Assembly: GCF_947568905.1 (NCBI RefSeq)
Contig: NC_079166.1
Location: forward strand, 91,202,001 to 91,266,000
Direction of reading: 5' to 3'
DNA: 64,000 nt
DNA from: Ostrea edulis
Taxonomy: Eukaryota
The notes beneath the pieces were generated by a model that was given only the letters and a program-made list of their open reading frames with translations, did not search any database and had not been told where the DNA came from. Below are positions 1,477 through 59,472 of this stretch, piece by piece; position 1 is the first letter of the stretch, and every line of letters begins with the position of its first letter. A program made the translations under genes and the position numbers.

Positions 1477-3743
1477 TTGAAACATAACATGCGCACTTTT
1501 AATGTGTGTAAGCCATGCTATTTGGGAAATGCTCAATCGTTGTATGCATCTTTCATCTCGAATGGCTTATACATGTGCATGCATTGCGAATATCAACCAT
1601 GGTTAGACATTGATATGGTACTTAAATCATTGAATAACTTTTGAAGTGATGACTGAGCAACGATGCTGTGGCCTAGAATGTTTTAGAGAATTGATGTTTA
1701 TGCTTGTTAAAGTTATGATGAAGACCTATTGTTATAAGTATGATAAAGACTGGGAGGAAGGGGTTCACCTTGTTTTTATTGCTGCAAGAAAAGCAATTCA
1801 AGAGTCTCTAAGATTCAGTTCCTTTGACTTAGTGTTTGGCCATACAGCTAGAGGTCCTTTGAAATTGTTGGAAAAAATTGCTAACGGAACCTAGTGTTCT
1901 TAACCTTTTAGAATGTGTATCTAATTTCAAAGAGAAACTTCGTAATGCTTGTGACTTAGCGAAATATAATCTCAAGAGTTCTCAAGCTGAAATGAAAGGT
2001 TGGTATGACAAAGATGCTAGGGACAGAGGTTTTAAACCAGGAGATAAGGTTCTTGTGTTTTTAACTGTTTCTGGCCATCCTTTGCAGGCCAGGTATTATG
2101 GTCCTTATGAAATTGAAAGCAATCTTAGTGATGTGAACTATGTTGTTAAGACACCTGAAAAATGAGTTTGTCAAATTAAGATTGATCACTGTTCGTTATC
2201 TCCACAATTCATTAACATTTGAAAGAATATTTTGGTAGATGTGACCGAAATTCTGTAAAATCAATTCCACTTGAACCAATGTTCAAACATTACAAAATTG
2301 TACTGTGAATGAACTGAGTGTAGAAACTTGTCAAACAAAACTTCAACTAGAATGTCCGCTAGAAGAACTCAAATTCTTGGCAATCTGGATATCAAACTTG
2401 GACATTCGAATATTCACCAAGAGAACAAGTTCAACGTCTCATGGCTAATTATCCTTCAATCTTCTCAGATGTTCTATAAAAGATCATTTCCGCTTGTCAT
2501 GATGTTATAGTTGGTGACGCTTTACCCATCAAGCAGCGTCCCTATCGTTTACACCCATTAAAATTGCAATACTTAAGAACAGAAGTGTAATACATGATGG
2601 ACAATGACATCGAATCAAGTAAAAGTGACCGGAGCTCACCTTGCACTCTAGTACTGAAAGCTGATGATACCTACAGATTATATACTGACTTTAGAAAAGA
2701 GAATTCTGTCACGAAAACATACTCTTATCCGATTCTTAGAATTGATGAATGTATTGACAAAATCGGAAATACCAAATTCATCAGTAAATTCGACATGTTG
2801 AAGGGTAACAGGCAAGTACCATTGACTGAAAGAGCCAAAGAAATCTCTGCATGTTTGACTCCCGATGGCTTCTTTCAATACAAGGTGATGCCGTTTCGTA
2901 TGAAAAATGCTCCAGCGACCTTTCAGCGTGTGATTCATTCCCTTCTTCATGACCTTCAAGGATGTGAAGCCTAATTGATGATGTAATCATCTACAGCGGC
3001 ACTCGGCAGGAACACTCGACATTATTGCAGGAGCAAATTTAACAGTGAACCTTGCAAAAAGTGACTTTTGTCATGCTACTGAAGAATATTTAGGTCATAA
3101 ATTAGGTCAGGGTTATGTTATTCCTATTCTGGTTAAAGTGAAGGATTTTGCAAAGTTACCGATTCCCACAAACACGAAAGAGATTTTTGGGCATGACAGG
3201 TTTTTATAGAACATTTTGTCCAAATTTGTCTTTACATGTAACAGTTGGTCCACTTACCAACTTATTGCAAAAGAGGGCTAATTTTGTATGGACAAAGGAC
3301 TGCGATGAATCATTTTGTAAAATGAAGTCTGTTCTCATAAGTAGTCCAGTCCTTTCAGCTCCTAATTTTTCTAAGCAATTTAAGCTTACTGTAGATGCTA
3401 ATGATGTAGGAATCGGTGATGTTTTGTTTCAAGAACACAATGACAATGTAGATAGAGTTGTTTCTTATTTTTTAAAGAAACTAAAATGTCAACAGAATCA
3501 TTTAACCATTGAAAAAGAGTATGTTACTTTAATGTTAGCTTTGCAACATTTTGATGTTTATTTGAAAGTTACTGCGCATCCAATTTTTGTTTTTACGGAT
3601 CACAACCCTCTCACCTTTTTGCATGAAATGTCAAACAAAAATCAAAGACCTGCATGAGGGAATTTATTAGCTCCACTTTTTTGGCACGCTGTTTTTGGCT
3701 ATATTTAGCTCTAAAACTTCATAGTTATTTCGGATTTCGTTGA

Positions 3744-3787
3744 GCATCACTGAAGAGACATTATTTGTCGAAATGCGCATCTGGTGC
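3744..3787 (+). ncRNA. Minimal type I hammerhead ribozyme, copy 1
   Basis: GCAUCA-CUGAAGA-GACA uuauu UGUC-GAAA-U gcgc A-U-C / UGGUGC: full core, 6-bp stem I, 4-bp stem II, palindromic AUGCGCAU stem III; predicted cleavage after 3781. Confidence 0.88.
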
Positions 3788-4093
3788 ATCAAAATTGGTA
3801 CCGTATAAGTTTTACATTATGACCCCTGGGTCGAGGCCTCTGCTGGTGGACTGTTAGTCACCGAGGGTCTCTACAGCCCAGTAGCTAAGTACTTCGTTAC
3901 TAGCTTGAAAATACGGATGTATATTTAATTGCTGTTACAAAATTTAGAAATTCATTTCAAAATTAAGGATTATCTCCCTCATGCATAGCTCTTATCCTTG
4001 GACGAATTTGGCTCCACTTTTTGGCACGCTGTTTTTGGCTATATTTAGCTCTAAAATTTCATAGTTATTTCGGATTTCAAACATTTCGGTTGA

Positions 4094-4137
4094 GCATCAC
4101 TGAAGAGACATTATTTGTCGAAATGCGCATCTGGTGC
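4094..4137 (+). ncRNA. Minimal type I hammerhead ribozyme, copy 2
   Basis: Identical to copy 1; predicted cleavage after 4131, 350 nt from copy 1. Confidence 0.88.
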
Positions 4138-4339
4138 ATCAAAATTGGTACCGTATAAGTTTTACATTAGTACAAAAGTATGATGTTGATATCAAACATA
4201 TCAAAGGCAGAGACAATGTTACAGCAGATGCTTTATCAAGAGTAGTGTGAGTATGTTTTGTTATTTTGTTGTTTCTTTGATTGATGTACATTGTATATTT
4301 GAGTTTATCATTGTCATTCAAACTTGTTTAAGGGGGAGG

Positions 4340-18767: not shown

Positions 18768-19101
18768 GGCCTCTGCTGGTGGACTGTTAGTCCCTGAGGG
18801 TCTTTACAGCCCAGTGGCTAAGTATTTCGTTACTAGCTTGAAAATACGGATGTATATTTAATTGCTGTTATAAAATTTAGAAATTCATTTCAAAATTAAG
18901 GATTATCTCCCTCACGCATAGCTCTTATCCTTTGAGGAAATTGACTCCACTTTTTTCGCACACTGTTTTTCGCTATAATAGCTCTAAAACTTCATTGTTA
19001 TTTCGGATTTCAAACATTTCGGTTGAGCATCACTGAAGAGACATTATTTGTCGAAATGCGCATATGGTGCATCAAAATTGGTACCGTATAAGTTTTACAT
19101 T
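18768..19101 (+). mobile_element. Hammerhead-bearing 350-nt family, 5'-truncated monomer
   Basis: Highly similar to 3835-4168; ends in TTTTACATT; flanked by ATTGTTG at 18758-18764 and 19099-19105. Confidence 0.9.
19027..19070 (+). ncRNA. Minimal type I hammerhead ribozyme, copy 3 (AUA cleavage triplet)
   Basis: Same fold; C17 replaced by A, which the NUH rule allows. Confidence 0.82.
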
Positions 19102-33153: not shown

Positions 33154-33935
33154 GGTACCAATTTTGATGCACCAGATGCGCATTTCGACAAAATATGTCT
33201 CTTCAGGTGTCACACCGGTAATTATTTTCACTATATATTACTATAGAGGAAAAAAATCATTAAAAATCAGTTTACAGAATTGATGCCGAATAACGCTGTC
33301 GGAAACGTTCTATGTTGCCTATGTCGTCTGCCGACACCAGAAAAACAACACCCTACGCGGCATTTTTGAAAAAAAAAATACCCGCAAACAAGACTACCCT
33401 CAAACCCACGTGTTTTTCGCATGTGTGTAAACAGCCGGAGTGCACCTCAGGAAGTAGCCTCAGCTACCTACAGCAAATAGTTCCTTTGTATACACTTGGT
33501 TATTTCTACAAATTACACAAAATTTCCTAATCAGGGGTACACAAATTCAGAGAAAAGAAGAAGAGGAAATGAGAAAAATCGCGCAAAGAAAAAAACATTT
33601 CTTTAAATATATGGAACTACAATTGACGAAGTTCAATTACCGGTATGATACCTTCAGTGATGCTCAAGCCGAAATTGTGGACATTCGAAATAACAATAAA
33701 CTTGTAAGAGCTAAAAGAAAACTAGAGTGCCAAAAACTGGAGCCAAATTGGTCCAAGGATAAGAGCTATGCGTGAAGGAGATAATCCTTAATTCTGAAAT
33801 GAATTTCTAAATTTCATCCCAGCAATTAAACATACATCCGTATTTTCAAGCTAATAACAAAGTACTTAGCTACTGGGCTCTGTAGAGACCCTCGTGGACT
33901 AACAATTCACCAGGAGAGGCCTCGACGCAGGAGTT
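33154..33935 (-). mobile_element. Hammerhead-bearing family monomer split by a MITE inside the ribozyme core
   Basis: 33652-33935 is the 5' part ending GAGCATCACTGAAG; 33154-33206 is the 3' part starting CTGAAGAGAC. Confidence 0.85.
33207..33651. mobile_element. 445-bp MITE
   Basis: TIR GTGTCACACCGGTAATT / GTATCATACCGGTAATT (15/17); duplication CTTCAG at 33201-33206 and 33652-33657 (can also be read as a 4-bp TTCA TSD). Confidence 0.85.
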
Positions 33936-34031
33936 ATAATGTAATATATATATAATTCAATAAAAAGCAGGAAAATATGCAGTTCCAAAATATATTCAAA
34001 TATATTCAAATCCACAGCCACACTCCACAGC

Positions 34032-34690
34032 CAAAGACAACCATCTAACTTGAAAAAATTACTTTTAAACGCGGAAAATATTTTACTGTAAATGATAACA
34101 TGACATGCAAGTCGAAAAACTTACTATACTGCATAATTTGCAACGGGTGTGGCGAGGAATATTATATATTGGACAAACCGGAACACAACTAACAGCCAGG
34201 ATGCGTGTCCATCGCCAACAAATTAACGATCCCAGTACAAGAAATACCCCATGCAGCAAACACTTCGACACCTGTGCTAGAGGCAACTACAGCGTATTTC
34301 CATTTTATAAACTTAAAACAGAATCAACGTCCATGAGACTTGCTGAAGAAAATTATTTGATTAAACTGTGTTCTCCTAAACTAAACAAACTTTAATCAAT
34401 ACATATATGAAACACTCTGATTGTTAAACCTCTCAATTCATCAACTTTAATCATTTTCATGCTTATTTTGTCCAAGTTACATTTCCCGAACTTTTGTATT
34501 ATGACATCATGTATCTATTCCCTCCTTGCAAAGACTATCATGACGTCGTGACGTCACAATAGACGTCTCGAAGATAAACACCTTTATGTTAAATCCAGAA
34601 AGCGCTAGTGATTTAAATATATTTTGGAACTGCAAATTGTCCTGCTTTTTTATTGAATTATTTTGACTGTGTGATATCAACTCTTTCTAT
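34032..34690 (+). mobile_element. 5'-truncated Penelope-like element: GIY-YIG endonuclease fragment plus 3' UTR/pLTR
   Basis: RQPSNLKKL..MTCKSKNLLYCIICNGCGE(fs)YIGQTGTQLTARMRVHR...CSKHF...EENYLI..PKLN*; typical PLE C-terminal GIY-YIG with one frameshift. Confidence 0.85.
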
Positions 34691-36558: not shown

Positions 36559-36636
36559 TGAGCATTACTGAAGAGACATTATTTGTCGAAATGCGCATCT
36601 GGTGCATCAAAATTGGTACCGTATAAGTTTTATATT
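36559..36636 (+). ncRNA. Minimal hammerhead copy 4 in a heavily 5'-truncated fragment
   Basis: GCAUUA-CUGAAGA...GAAA-UGCGCAUC/UGGUGC at 36562-36605; the C-to-U change keeps stem I as a G-U pair. Confidence 0.8.
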
Positions 36637-36654
36637 CTAGACAGATGTGCTAAA

Positions 36655-36822
36655 ACATACTGCAAATTAATGATCGATAGTTAAATTACTATGATGAAAT
36701 GCAAATTAATGATCGATAGTTAAATTACTATGATGAAATGCAAATTAATGATCGATAGTTAAATTACTATGATGAAATGCAAATTTAATGATCGATAGTT
36801 AAATTACTATGATGAAGTGCAA
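36655..36822. repeat. 39-bp tandem repeat, about 4 units
   Basis: Unit TGCAAATTAATGATCGATAGTTAAATTACTATGATGAAA. Confidence 0.95.
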
Positions 36823-58515: not shown

Positions 58516-58715
58516 NNNNNNNNNNNNNNNNNNNNNNNNNNNNNNNNNNNNNNNNNNNNNNNNNNNNNNNNNNNNNNNNNNNNNNNNNNNNNNNNNNNNN
58601 NNNNNNNNNNNNNNNNNNNNNNNNNNNNNNNNNNNNNNNNNNNNNNNNNNNNNNNNNNNNNNNNNNNNNNNNNNNNNNNNNNNNNNNNNNNNNNNNNNNN
58701 NNNNNNNNNNNNNNN
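58516..58715. other. Assembly gap (200 N)
   Basis: Run of N. Confidence 1.
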
Positions 58716-58780
58716 TGCACCAGATGCGCATTTCAACAAATAATGTCTCTTCAGTGATGTTCAACCGAAATGTTTGAAAT
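58716..58780 (-). ncRNA. Minimal hammerhead copy abutting the assembly gap
   Basis: ACAUCA-CUGAAGA-GACA..UGUU-GAAA-UGCGCAUC/UGGUGC at 58717-58760; G10.1-C11.1 has become G-U. Confidence 0.75.
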
Positions 58781-58884: not shown

Positions 58885-59472
58885 ACTGCATATCCTGTGC
58901 TTTTTCAATGTTAGTGATGCTGAATTTAAATGTTCCATTCTGTTAGCATTGCTGAATTTGAATGTTCTATTTTGTTTCAATGCTAGTATTGCTGAATGTG
59001 AATGTTTCCTTATGTTTCAATGCTAGTATTGCTAAAGTTGAATGTTCTATTCTGTTTCAAGGCTAGTGATGCTGAATTTGAATTTTCCTTTTTGTTTAAT
59101 GCTAGTATTGCTGAATTTGAATGTTCCATTCTGTTTTAATGCTGGTGTTGAATGTTCCATTCTGTTTTGATGCTAGTATCTCTGGTGTTGAATGTTCCAT
59201 TCTGTTTTGATGCTAGTATTGCTGGTTTTGAATGGTCCATTCTGTTTCAATGTTAGTGATGCTGAATTTAAATGCTCCATTCTGTTTCAACGCTAGTATT
59301 GCTGAACTTGAACGTTCTATTCTGTTTCAACGCTAGTATTGCTGGTTTTGAATGGTCCATTCTGTTTCATGGTAGTATTATTGAACTAAATGTTCCATAT
59401 TGTCTAGGTGTTAGTGATGTTGGTTTTGAGTGTCACATTCTTTTTCAATGTTAGTATTGCTGAATTTGAATT
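58885..59472. repeat. Diverged 40-bp minisatellite, about 14 units
   Basis: Unit approximately TGTTCCATTCTGTTTCAATGCTAGTATTGCTGAATTTGAA. Confidence 0.9.

What the first reader, a model, noticed from the sequence alone, without database searches (positions are those of the whole stretch)
3671..4168. Two hammerhead ribozymes exactly 350 nt apart: a candidate retrozyme / circular RNA unit
Seen: two identical minimal type I hammerheads (CUGAAGA core, G-C-closed stem II, GAAA, 6-bp stem I, palindromic AUGCGCAU stem III) with predicted cuts after 3781 and 4131, in a non-coding partial tandem inserted into an LTR element's RNase H. Established: minimal hammerheads with palindromic stem III act as dimers and mark Penelope pLTRs and metazoan non-LTR retrozymes, whose tandem units are processed into small linear and circular RNAs. 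Inference: transcription through this locus would excise a 350-nt monomer able to circularise and be copied by an RT in trans. The class is known from other metazoans; whether this family has been described I cannot check.
Basis: partly seen in the sequence, partly recalled or inferred. Interest (0 to 1): 0.9.

Follow-up and report, generated by a model that had tools for sequence, protein, structure and literature searches.

The report
Bivalve hammerhead retrozyme copy, one of thousands
This is a real pair of self-cutting hammerhead RNA motifs in a 500-base insertion. It is one ordinary copy of a very abundant non-coding mobile repeat of a kind already described in mussels, corals and salamanders, and no circular RNA was shown here.

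Summary
Two identical type I hammerheads sit at 3744-3787 and 4094-4137. Their predicted cuts, after 3781 and 4131, are exactly 350 nt apart. The Rfam model RF00163 matches at full length with 31.2 bits, just under its 34-bit cut-off.

The pair lies in a clean 500-nt insertion (3670-4169) that splits the RNase H ORF of an LTR retrotransposon. Ten related copies of that host element are uninterrupted at this point.

The repeat is a non-coding, AT-rich, young family. The 895-Mb genome holds about 14,400 hammerheads of this sequence. Copies end 35-41 nt after the cut site, start anywhere, and hold less than one to five or more units. None of 30 sampled loci has a Penelope-like element (PLE) ORF of the tested family beside it. 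It is therefore not an ordinary PLE pseudo-LTR, though untested PLE families could differ.

Three PLE families in the same genome carry their own hammerheads. Helices I and II differ between families but stay paired.

The best reading is a metazoan non-LTR retrozyme, a SINE-like dependant of PLEs. That class was described in 2020. I found no paper on oysters, and the scan has already found this family elsewhere in this genome.

RNA-labelled libraries contain the unit, but only as contigs, so cutting and circles are unproven. A whole-genome count found no excess of copies starting at the cut site. Interest is low to moderate.

The parts
3670..4169 (+). Whole insertion: 1.43 units of the 350-nt repeat (5' partial unit, one full unit, 38-nt tail).
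   Evidence: BLAST of the unit against the window. Empty sites in 10 paralogous LTR-element copies are contiguous across 3669|4170, with boundary uncertainty of up to 4 nt ('ATTA').
3670..3781 (+). 5' partial unit (about unit positions 229-350), with a 10-nt deletion next to 3739.
3744..3787 (+). Hammerhead 1. Helix I 3744-3749 pairs with 3782-3787. Core CUGAAGA is 3750-3756. Helix II is 3757-3769. GAAA is 3770-3773. The palindromic helix III AUGCGCAU is 3773-3780. C17 is 3781, and the predicted cut is after 3781.
   Evidence: Rfam RF00163, 31.2 bits, E 1.2e-6, model 1-45. My motif scanner. Folds.
3782..4131 (+). Cut-to-cut monomer of 350 nt. GC is 38.9%. The longest ORF starting at Met is 27-30 aa.
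   Evidence: It is 96-99% identical to many genomic copies.
4094..4137 (+). Hammerhead 2, identical to hammerhead 1. The predicted cut is after 4131.
4132..4169 (+). 3' tail of the element (unit positions 1-38). The family's 3' end is fixed here.
   Evidence: 29 of 30 loci end at unit positions 35-41, with the sequence ...TTTTACAT[TA].
3148..3669 (+). Host: RNase H part of the pol ORF of an LTR retrotransposon, upstream half. It carries a TGA at 3655-3657.
   Evidence: Pfam RT_RNaseH_2 5.1e-23 and RT_RNaseH 1.2e-19. ORF list.
4170..4247 (+). Host: continuation of the same reading frame (VQKYDVDIKHIKGRDNVTADALSRVV*).
   Evidence: Read from the sequence. Aligns with paralogous copies.
18768..19101 (+). 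Another copy of the family. It is 5'-truncated (unit positions 54-350 plus a 37-nt tail) and has one hammerhead with C17 changed to A.
33154..33952 (-). An older copy (about 86% identity). Its hammerhead is split by an insert of about 445 nt at 33207-33651, flanked by a duplicated CTGAAG.
36559..36636 (+). A 78-nt, 5'-truncated copy consisting of a hammerhead and a 37-nt tail only.
58723..58780 (-). A copy fragment that runs into an assembly gap of Ns. The gap was left untouched.

Best explanation
The stretch 3670-4169 is one recent insertion of an abundant, non-coding, non-autonomous retroelement of a bivalve genome. It is a metazoan 'non-LTR retrozyme': a 350-nt unit carrying a type I hammerhead.

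Shown here:
- The hammerhead is a genuine near-canonical type I motif with a weak, palindromic helix III.
- The element is mobile. Paralogous empty sites exist, and about 14,400 hammerhead copies are dispersed on both strands.
- Copies share a 3' end 35-41 nt past the cut site. Their 5' ends vary, and they hold from less than one to at least five head-to-tail units.
- Copies are 96-99% alike.
- The element is not attached to PLE ORFs of the tested family.
- PLEs of the same genome carry hammerheads of the same build within roughly the last 50-100 nt of the element.

Inferred:
- A PLE-type reverse transcriptase starts cDNA synthesis by target-primed reverse transcription at a fixed site just 3' of the hammerhead. 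The short ATT/ATTA overlap with the target fits this.
- The template still has the cut-site junction intact. It is either a religated circular monomer copied round and round, or an uncleaved multimer.
- The enzyme falls off at variable distance, which gives the variable 5' ends and the partial tandems.
- In a transcript spanning this locus, the two hammerheads would pair through AUGCGCAU into a double hammerhead. That would release the 350-nt monomer 3782-4131, which a host RNA ligase could circularise.
For: Motif and structure. Rfam RF00163 gives a full-length match of 31.2 bits, E 1.2e-6.

Dimer: two hammerhead 44-mers co-fold at -27.3 kcal/mol with the 8-bp inter-copy helix III, against -7.8 for one alone, where helix III does not form. 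The MFE fold of 3700-4169 contains the pairs 3773-3780:4123-4130 and 3744-3749:4132-4137.

Covariation: PLE families A, B and C keep the CUGANGA...GAAA...UH core. Their helix I and II sequences are entirely different but still paired: tcac/gtga with TGGAT/ATCCA, atcta/tagat with GCCC/GGGC, tacact/agtgta with GCCG/CGGC. The repeat has gcatca/tggtgc with GACA/TGTC.

Mobility: the empty sites read ...TTTATTA|TTGCAAG... in 10 paralogous host elements.

Abundance: the 38-nt pattern with up to 2 mismatches gives 7313 + 7135 hits, and the reversed control gives 0.

Ends and arrays. About 17% of loci (14 of 83 in the listed sample) have two or more junctions.

Independence from PLEs: tblastn of the 765-aa family A PLE ORF (Pfam RVT_1; its C-terminal end is about 90% identical to the GIY-YIG fragment of this window) against the 30 loci with 1.5-kb flanks gave one weak hit.

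Constraint: the hammerhead region differs at 0.97% of positions, against 1.9-4.1% elsewhere.

RNA: contigs from libraries labelled RNA-seq cover almost the whole unit. Examples are a 377-nt contig on 3792-4167 and a 321-nt contig on 3848-4167. The host flanks have no coverage.

The class definition matches PMC7229834, PMC7761336 and bioRxiv 10.64898/2026.07.22.740005.
Against: No cleavage or circle is shown. All runs were contigs, so there are no molecule ends. RNA libraries can also contain DNA.

The Rfam score is below the gathering threshold.

The circular 350-nt unit is no more stable than shuffled sequence (-70.4 kcal/mol, z = +0.2). Published retrozyme circles are described as highly self-paired.

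No partner PLE was found. Local alignment scores of the unit against the 3' regions of PLE A, B and C equal the shuffle null.

Genomic copies show no pile-up of 5' ends at the cut site. A non-consensus base before the cut occurs in 390 of 9986 copies (3.9%), against 284 of 9394 (3.0%) at a matched control site. Three non-consensus bases occur in 23 copies, against 39 at the control. There is therefore no genomic trace that the ribozyme cuts the templates.

Most loci hold a single hammerhead. A plain SINE-like life cycle without circles explains them equally well.
Confidence: 0.85

Rival explanations
1. It is an ordinary Penelope-like element pseudo-LTR: a solo or truncated 3' end of an autonomous PLE, not a separate non-autonomous family.
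For: PLEs of this genome carry type I hammerheads with a palindromic helix III near their 3' ends, and they form partial tandems (PMC4209133, PMC8557442). The repeat's build is PLE-like: a fixed 3' end, variable 5' ends and partial tandems. Only three PLE families could be inspected.
Against: Among 30 loci with 1.5-kb flanks, only one had any RT-like match to the family A PLE ORF. That match was 37% identical, on the opposite strand, and several hundred bases beyond the repeats at that locus. The 350-nt unit repeats as a closed cycle in arrays of up to five units with no ORF. There is no similarity to the 3' UTRs of PLE A, B or C.
Confidence: 0.07
2. It is a SINE-like PLE dependant whose hammerhead serves mainly as the RT recognition or 3' module. 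The tandems arise by PLE-style template jumping on linear RNA, and circular RNA plays no part in transposition.
For: Most loci have one hammerhead and less than one unit. Copy lengths look like a simple decay from a fixed 3' start. There is no cut-site signature at 5' ends. The circle has no unusual stability. Hammerhead-bearing PLEs themselves make partial tandems (PMC8557442).
Against: Arrays of 3-5 full units with unit-exact periodicity are explained most simply by going round a circle. In mussel, coral and axolotl the homologous class accumulates as circles (PMC7229834). Nothing here excludes this rival. It differs from the best explanation only in the template.
Confidence: 0.3
3. It is a satellite or tandem-repeat fragment spread by DNA-level duplication, and the hammerhead-like motif is a non-functional relic or a chance match.
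For: No activity has been measured. The Rfam score is under the gathering threshold.
Against: The pattern is expected 0.00 times by chance and has 0 reversed-control hits, against about 14,400 real hits. The insertion is clean and has paralogous empty sites. Copies are dispersed on all large contigs and on both strands with unrelated flanks. The hammerhead is the least variable part of the unit. Helices covary across four families.
Confidence: 0.02

Closest known systems
Metazoan non-LTR retrozymes (Cervera & de la Pena 2020, PMC7229834), especially the 350-390-nt repeats of the mussel Mytilus galloprovincialis
   Same: A type I hammerhead sits in a short, AT-rich, non-coding unit of about 350 nt. 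Head-to-tail copies are dispersed in thousands. There is no LTR. The elements coexist with hammerhead-bearing PLEs. Helix III is weak.
   Different: The unit sequence is, as far as I could check, specific to this lineage. Here most loci are 5'-truncated single-hammerhead copies with a sharply fixed 3' end 35-41 nt past the cut. The predicted circle is not unusually self-paired. The circular RNA is not demonstrated. No paper on oysters was found.
Hammerheads in the pseudo-LTRs of Penelope-like elements (Cervera & de la Pena 2014, PMC4209133; Craig et al. 2021, PMC8557442)
   Same: Type I topology, a palindromic helix III suited to dimers, a position near the element's 3' end, and partial tandem insertions. 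Three such PLE families occur in this genome.
   Different: This repeat has no ORF and is not next to one. Its helix III is 2 bp plus GCGC with an AUC cut triplet, where the local PLEs have 1 bp plus GCGC with CUA. There is no sequence similarity outside the catalytic core.
Vertebrate non-LTR retrozymes as PLE derivatives (Li, Clavereau & Pollet 2026, bioRxiv 10.64898/2026.07.22.740005)
   Same: They have the same proposed relation: non-autonomous sequences that co-occur with PLEs. Monomer proportion and copy number vary.
   Different: In Xenopus many retrozyme families align with PLE termini. Here no such similarity was found with the three PLE families tested.
Newt satellite 2 and the Schistosoma Sm-alpha hammerhead repeats (from my own knowledge and the introduction of PMC7229834)
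   Same: Units of about 330 nt with type I hammerheads that work best as double hammerheads through a short palindromic helix III. Copies are tandem and dispersed.
   Different: The host phyla and the sequences differ. These repeats are now counted within the same retrozyme class.
Plant LTR retrozymes (PMC4918200)
   Same: Non-autonomous, bounded by hammerheads, and proposed to use a circular RNA intermediate.
   Different: Plants have type III hammerheads inside real LTRs, a PBS and PPT, 4-bp TSDs, GC above 55%, and mobilisation by Gypsy elements. None of this applies here.

Membership tests
Hammerhead ribozyme, type I (Rfam RF00163) | Conserved core CUGANGA ... GAAA ... UH with the cut after H | tested here: met
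   CUGAAGA, GAAA and AUC are present at both copies.
Hammerhead ribozyme, type I (Rfam RF00163) | Three helices around the core with helix I open (type I), and G10.1-C11.1 closing helix II | tested here: met
   Helix I has 6 bp, plus 4 more after a 1-nt bulge. Helix II has 4 bp and starts with G-C. Helix III is 2 bp plus a GCGC loop.
Hammerhead ribozyme, type I (Rfam RF00163) | Covariance-model score at or above Rfam's gathering score (34 bits) | tested here: not met
   31.2 bits, E 1.2e-6, full model 1-45 on an 81-nt search. There was no hit with the default filters.
Hammerhead ribozyme, type I (Rfam RF00163) | Helices supported by compensatory changes in relatives | tested here: met
   Four hammerhead families of this genome have wholly different but fully paired helices I and II around the same core. 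This was compared by eye and script, because MAFFT misaligned them.
Hammerhead ribozyme, type I (Rfam RF00163) | Self-cleavage at the predicted site | not testable with these tools
   Only folding is available. The dimer is favoured at -27.3 against 2 x -7.8 kcal/mol. Genomic 5' ends give no trace of cutting.
Metazoan non-LTR retrozyme | Type I hammerhead inside a short (150-450 bp) head-to-tail repeat of low GC | tested here: met
   The unit is 350 nt with 38.9% GC, in arrays of 1.1 to more than 5 units.
Metazoan non-LTR retrozyme | Non-coding, with no LTR, PBS or PPT | tested here: met
   The longest Met-started ORF is 27-30 aa in any frame of the cyclic unit. The terminal repeats are simply the next unit. 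PBS and PPT were not searched for specifically.
Metazoan non-LTR retrozyme | Dispersed multicopy retroelement with evidence of insertion | tested here: met
   About 14,400 hammerheads, paralogous empty sites and unrelated flanks at 30 loci.
Metazoan non-LTR retrozyme | Expressed as unit-length linear and circular RNA | tested here: inconclusive
   The unit is present as contigs in RNA-seq-labelled libraries of two studies, with the flanks silent. Contigs cannot show ends, strand or circles, and DNA carry-over is not excluded.
Metazoan non-LTR retrozyme | Coexistence with autonomous PLEs that carry hammerheads | tested here: met
   Family A has a 765-aa ORF with Pfam RVT_1. The GIY-YIG domain was detected on this window's fragment, to which that ORF's C-terminal end is about 90% identical. 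Families A, B and C each have a hammerhead.
Metazoan non-LTR retrozyme | Circle predicted to be stable and highly self-paired (a described feature, not strictly defining) | tested here: not met
   The circular MFE is -70.4 kcal/mol, against a shuffle mean of -71.7 with sd 5.6, z = +0.2.
PLE pseudo-LTR (ordinary part of an autonomous Penelope-like element) | Lies directly beside, and in the same orientation as, a PLE RT/GIY-YIG ORF | tested here: not met
   1 of 30 loci has a weak, opposite-strand RT match within 1.5 kb, using the family A ORF as query. The window copy lies inside an LTR element.
PLE pseudo-LTR (ordinary part of an autonomous Penelope-like element) | Sequence identity with the terminal region of a PLE | tested here: not met
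   Local alignment scores of 18-20 against a shuffle mean of 20-20.5 for PLE A, B and C. Other PLE families could not be fetched.

The most novel reading that the evidence does not exclude
The near-identical repeat, seen in RNA libraries labelled 'mollusc metagenome' and 'marine metagenome' and in part in five other coded organisms (A-E), might be a currently active, abundantly expressed circular RNA element shared between bivalve species by horizontal transfer.

Its hammerhead plus 37-nt tail would then be the long-sought recognition module that tells which PLE reverse transcriptase mobilises animal retrozymes. PMC7761336 states that no such conserved motif is known.
Probability: 0.1. Interest if true: 0.65.

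Novelty: new member of a known kind. Interest (0 to 1): 0.3.

Why it matters
The result adds a very large family to a known class of ribozyme-bearing mobile RNAs. The family has about 14,400 hammerheads in 895 Mb and, as far as I could find, has not been published for this lineage.

Two family-level facts constrain the still-unproven transposition mechanism. First, the 3' end is fixed 35-41 nt past the cut site, matching the near-terminal position of hammerheads in the PLEs of the same genome. Second, there is no excess of 5' ends at the cut site. Together they say that the copied RNA had an intact cut-site junction. It was therefore either a circle or an uncleaved RNA, and cDNA synthesis starts just downstream of the ribozyme.

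For genome annotation, Rfam's gathering threshold and default filters miss every copy. The copy in this window has no special importance.

Tried and rejected
- Rfam at gathering score on the whole window, and at E<=10 on 651 nt, returned no hammerhead. Only an 81-nt search did. The one E-value hit on 651 nt (MIR169_2, 17.3 bits against a cut-off of 50) is chance.

- I looked for the autonomous partner. I followed the GIY-YIG fragment at 34105-34392 to PLE family A and two more distant families. Each has its own hammerhead. None shares sequence with the repeat. A 'TTGGNACNGTATA' resemblance between the tails of family A and the repeat did not stand out in that local alignment, so I dropped it.

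- I tried to fetch 80 hammerhead-anchored loci for an unbiased census of 5' ends. I did not try to obtain the letters another way. I used whole-genome pattern counts instead.

- I tested the idea that copies starting exactly at the cut site (2 of my 30 loci, and an earlier scan note) are traces of ribozyme cutting. The counts show no enrichment over a matched control site, so I rejected it.

- The clustering of copy lengths just above one unit in my 30 loci was rejected as evidence for a circular template. That sample was selected for at least one full unit, and a simple decay of lengths gives the same picture.

- Read laying served contigs only. No molecule ends, strand or circle junction can be read from them. 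A 377-nt contig whose two ends overlap by about 26 nt is equally expected from tandem DNA.

- The MAFFT alignment of the four hammerhead families misplaced the helices. It was not used for pair counting.

- There is no hammerhead of opposite polarity in the unit, so viroid-like symmetric RNA replication is not suggested.

The N stretch next to 58723 was left as it is.
Full report
**What is there.** The window holds an 81-nt block at 3739-3819 that recurs at 100% identity at 4089-4169, exactly 350 nt downstream. A second block (3678-3738 / 4018-4078) is 98% identical and spaced 340 nt apart, because the first partial unit lacks 10 nt.

Each 81-nt block contains GCAUCA-CUGAAGA-GACA UUAUU UGUC-GAAA-UGCGCA-UC followed by UGGUGC. 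This is a type I hammerhead. Helix I has 6 bp, including one G-U pair. Helix II has 4 bp and starts with G-C. Helix III is A-U and U-A closing a GCGC loop, which is the palindrome AUGCGCAU. The cut triplet is AUC.

A pattern for the core plus helix III has 5 hits in the window and 0.00 expected from shuffles.

Rfam gave nothing on the whole window at gathering score or on 651 nt at E<=10. On 81 nt, where the filters are laxer, RF00163 Hammerhead_1 matches 3744-3787 over the whole model. The score is 31.2 bits, E 1.2e-6, three bits under the gathering score of 34.

**It is an insertion.** The ORF ending at 3657 has RT_RNaseH_2 and RT_RNaseH domains (5e-23 and 1e-19), and the ORF upstream has RVT_1. 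The reading frame continues after 4169 (...NLL | VQKYDVDIKHIKG...).

I searched the genome with 3250-3669 and compared ten related copies of this LTR element, which are 82-88% identical. All run straight from ...TTTATTA into TTGCAAGAG..., with nothing between them.

The element is therefore a clean insert of 500 nt, uncertain by up to 4 nt (3670-4169). It has no deletion and no duplication longer than the ambiguous ATTA.

**It is one copy of a huge family.** The genome (895 Mb, 52 contigs) has 7313 + 7135 matches to the 38-nt hammerhead with up to 2 mismatches. The reversed control has none. That is about one hammerhead per 62 kb. The window alone has five copies.

Full units elsewhere are 96-99% identical to this one. 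In 30 fetched loci, 29 copies end at unit positions 35-41 after the cut (...TTTTACAT, ACATT, ACATTA). Their 5' ends lie anywhere, and they hold one to five or more full units. The flanks are unrelated to each other.

From the listed hits, about 17% of loci (14 of 83) have two or more cut-site junctions. Most copies are 5'-truncated with a single hammerhead. The two-hammerhead state of this locus is common in absolute terms, on the order of 2,000 loci.

The unit has 38.9% GC and no Met-started ORF above 30 aa in any frame of the cyclic sequence. Across 107 alignments, the hammerhead differs at 0.97% of positions, against 1.9-4.1% elsewhere. Its most frequent changes are at the free N7 position and at a CpG.

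**Relation to Penelope-like elements.** The GIY-YIG fragment at 34105-34392 (Pfam GIY-YIG at the cut-off) led to a PLE family (A) with more than 1,400 candidate copies. Family A has an intact 765-aa ORF with a Pfam RVT_1 domain. Its C-terminal end is about 90% identical to that GIY-YIG fragment. I also inspected two more distant families, B and C.

Each family has its own type I hammerhead 200-250 nt after the ORF and within roughly the last 50-100 nt of the element, followed by (TA)n:

| Family | Helix I 5' | Core | Helix II | Core | Helix III | Cut | Helix I 3' |
|---|---|---|---|---|---|---|---|
| A | tcac | CUGAGGA | TGGAT..ATCCA | GAAA | GCGC | UA | gtga |
| B | atcta | CUGACGA | GCCC..GGGC | GAAA | GCGC | UA | tagat |
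| C | tacact | CUGAAGA | GCCG..CGGC | GAAA | GCGC | UA | agtgta |

Against the repeat's gcatca/tggtgc and GACA/TGTC, helices I and II are completely different yet fully paired, while the core is unchanged. This is good comparative support that these are real hammerheads.

The repeat is not a piece of these PLEs. Local alignment of the unit with their 3' regions scores at the shuffle mean. tblastn of the family A ORF against the 30 loci with 1.5-kb flanks gave one weak, opposite-strand RT hit. The autonomous partner therefore remains unidentified.

**How the ribozyme would work.** Alone, the 44-nt motif folds at -7.8 kcal/mol without helix III, and the hammerhead shape itself scores only -3.7. 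Two copies co-fold at -27.3 with helices I and II kept and an 8-bp AUGCGCAU/AUGCGCAU helix III between them.

The unconstrained MFE fold of the 470-nt transcript 3700-4169 (-102.8) already contains that inter-hammerhead helix (3773-3780 with 4123-4130). It also pairs the helix I 5' strand of hammerhead 1 with the strand just after the cut site of hammerhead 2. This is the geometry of a double hammerhead as described for newt and viroid RNAs (cited in PMC4209133).

This agrees with the literature: most metazoan type I hammerheads have helix I of 6 bp, helix II of 4 bp and a 1-2 bp helix III capped by a small palindromic loop, and they work as dimers (PMC4209133, PMC7229834). All of this is prediction. 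No cleavage was measured.

**Is there a trace of cutting or of circles?** Runs labelled RNA-seq hold the unit. They are small 'mollusc metagenome' libraries and a marine metatranscriptome, from two studies. Contigs cover 3789-4070, 3792-4167 and 3848-4167, and the host flanks have zero coverage. All runs were served as contigs, so they show presence in those libraries only. They do not show transcription with certainty, ends, strand or circles.

I then asked whether genomic copies tend to begin at the cut site, as they would if reverse transcriptase ran off cleaved templates. Whole-genome exact counts gave:

| Test | Cut site | Control site 9 nt downstream (same ATC context) |
|---|---|---|
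| Consensus C before the next 24 nt | 9596 | 9110 |
| Non-C before the next 24 nt | 390 (3.9%) | 284 (3.0%) |
| All three preceding bases non-consensus | 23 | 39 |

There is no pile-up. No sampled copy ends at the cut site either. 29 of 30 end 35-41 nt beyond it, and the other ends further inside the unit.

The copied RNAs therefore had an intact junction at the hammerhead nearest the 3' end. They were either religated circles or uncleaved transcripts. The data cannot tell these apart.

The predicted circle is not unusually stable (z = +0.2). Published retrozyme circles are described as highly self-paired (PMC7229834, PMC7761336).

**Comparison with what is known.** The features match the 'non-LTR retrozymes' of animals. 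That class has type I hammerheads in AT-rich tandem units of 150-450 bp, no LTR, PBS or PPT, thousands of copies, and coexistence with hammerhead-bearing PLEs. It is expressed as 170-400-nt linear and circular RNAs. The mussel units are 350-390 bp (PMC7229834). [quoted passage not shown]

I found no paper that describes them in oysters. Earlier notes of this scan call the genome an oyster. They had already found and followed up this family on other pieces of the same genome as an ordinary abundant repeat. I did not identify the species myself.

- the empty-site proof for this copy;
- the genome-wide count;
- the covariation across four hammerhead families of one genome;
- the negative cut-site census, which speaks against reading single 'starts at the cut site' cases as traces of ribozyme action.

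**Verdict.** Cleavage, circularisation and the mobilising enzyme remain inferred. This is a new member of a known kind. The particular locus is ordinary.

Noticed in passing
window 33207-33651 (- strand reading), inside the repeat copy 33154-33952: An insert of about 445 nt splits an older copy's hammerhead inside CUGAAG. The insert is flanked by a duplicated CTGAAG and has imperfect terminal inverted repeats (GTATCATACCGGTAATT... / ...AATTACCGGTGTGACAC). It looks like a small DNA transposon (MITE) with a 6-bp target duplication.
   Followed up: partly
window 34105-34392 (+); loci L032-L050, L063-L076, L077: Three Penelope-like element families (A, B, C) have their own type I hammerheads within roughly the last 50-100 nt of the element, followed by (TA)n. 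Family A has more than 1,400 candidate copies and intact 691-765-aa ORFs. Some family A copies carry an extra 45 nt or so before the (TA)n.
   Followed up: partly
window 19033-19064 (+): This copy has A instead of C at the cleavage position (AUA instead of AUC), which is still an allowed hammerhead triplet. 'A' is also common among the 390 non-C copies genome-wide, including a cluster of hits at C2:67.5-67.8 Mb that looks like a local duplication.
   Followed up: no
window 36640-36820 (+): A tandem repeat of about 43 nt (tgcaaattaatgatcgatagttaaattactatgatgaaa...) lies directly after the 78-nt truncated repeat copy.
   Followed up: no
window 58900-59250 (- strand reading): A tandem array with a unit of roughly 60 nt (...aacagaatggaacattcaa..cagcaatactagcat...) lies upstream of the repeat fragment that abuts the assembly gap. 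The Ns at about 58516-58718 were left untouched.
   Followed up: no
window 3655-3657 and the host element 1646-4247: The host LTR element is itself decayed. It has an in-frame TGA just before the insertion, and its pol is split into several ORFs. It is 82-88% identical to its paralogs, so it is much older than the repeat copy, which differs from the family majority at only two positions of the unit (79 and 276).
   Followed up: partly
runs X6-X24: Coded organisms A-E hold 11-43% of the sampled 31-mers of this stretch. The family, or at least its hammerhead, is therefore present nearly unchanged in other species.
   Followed up: no
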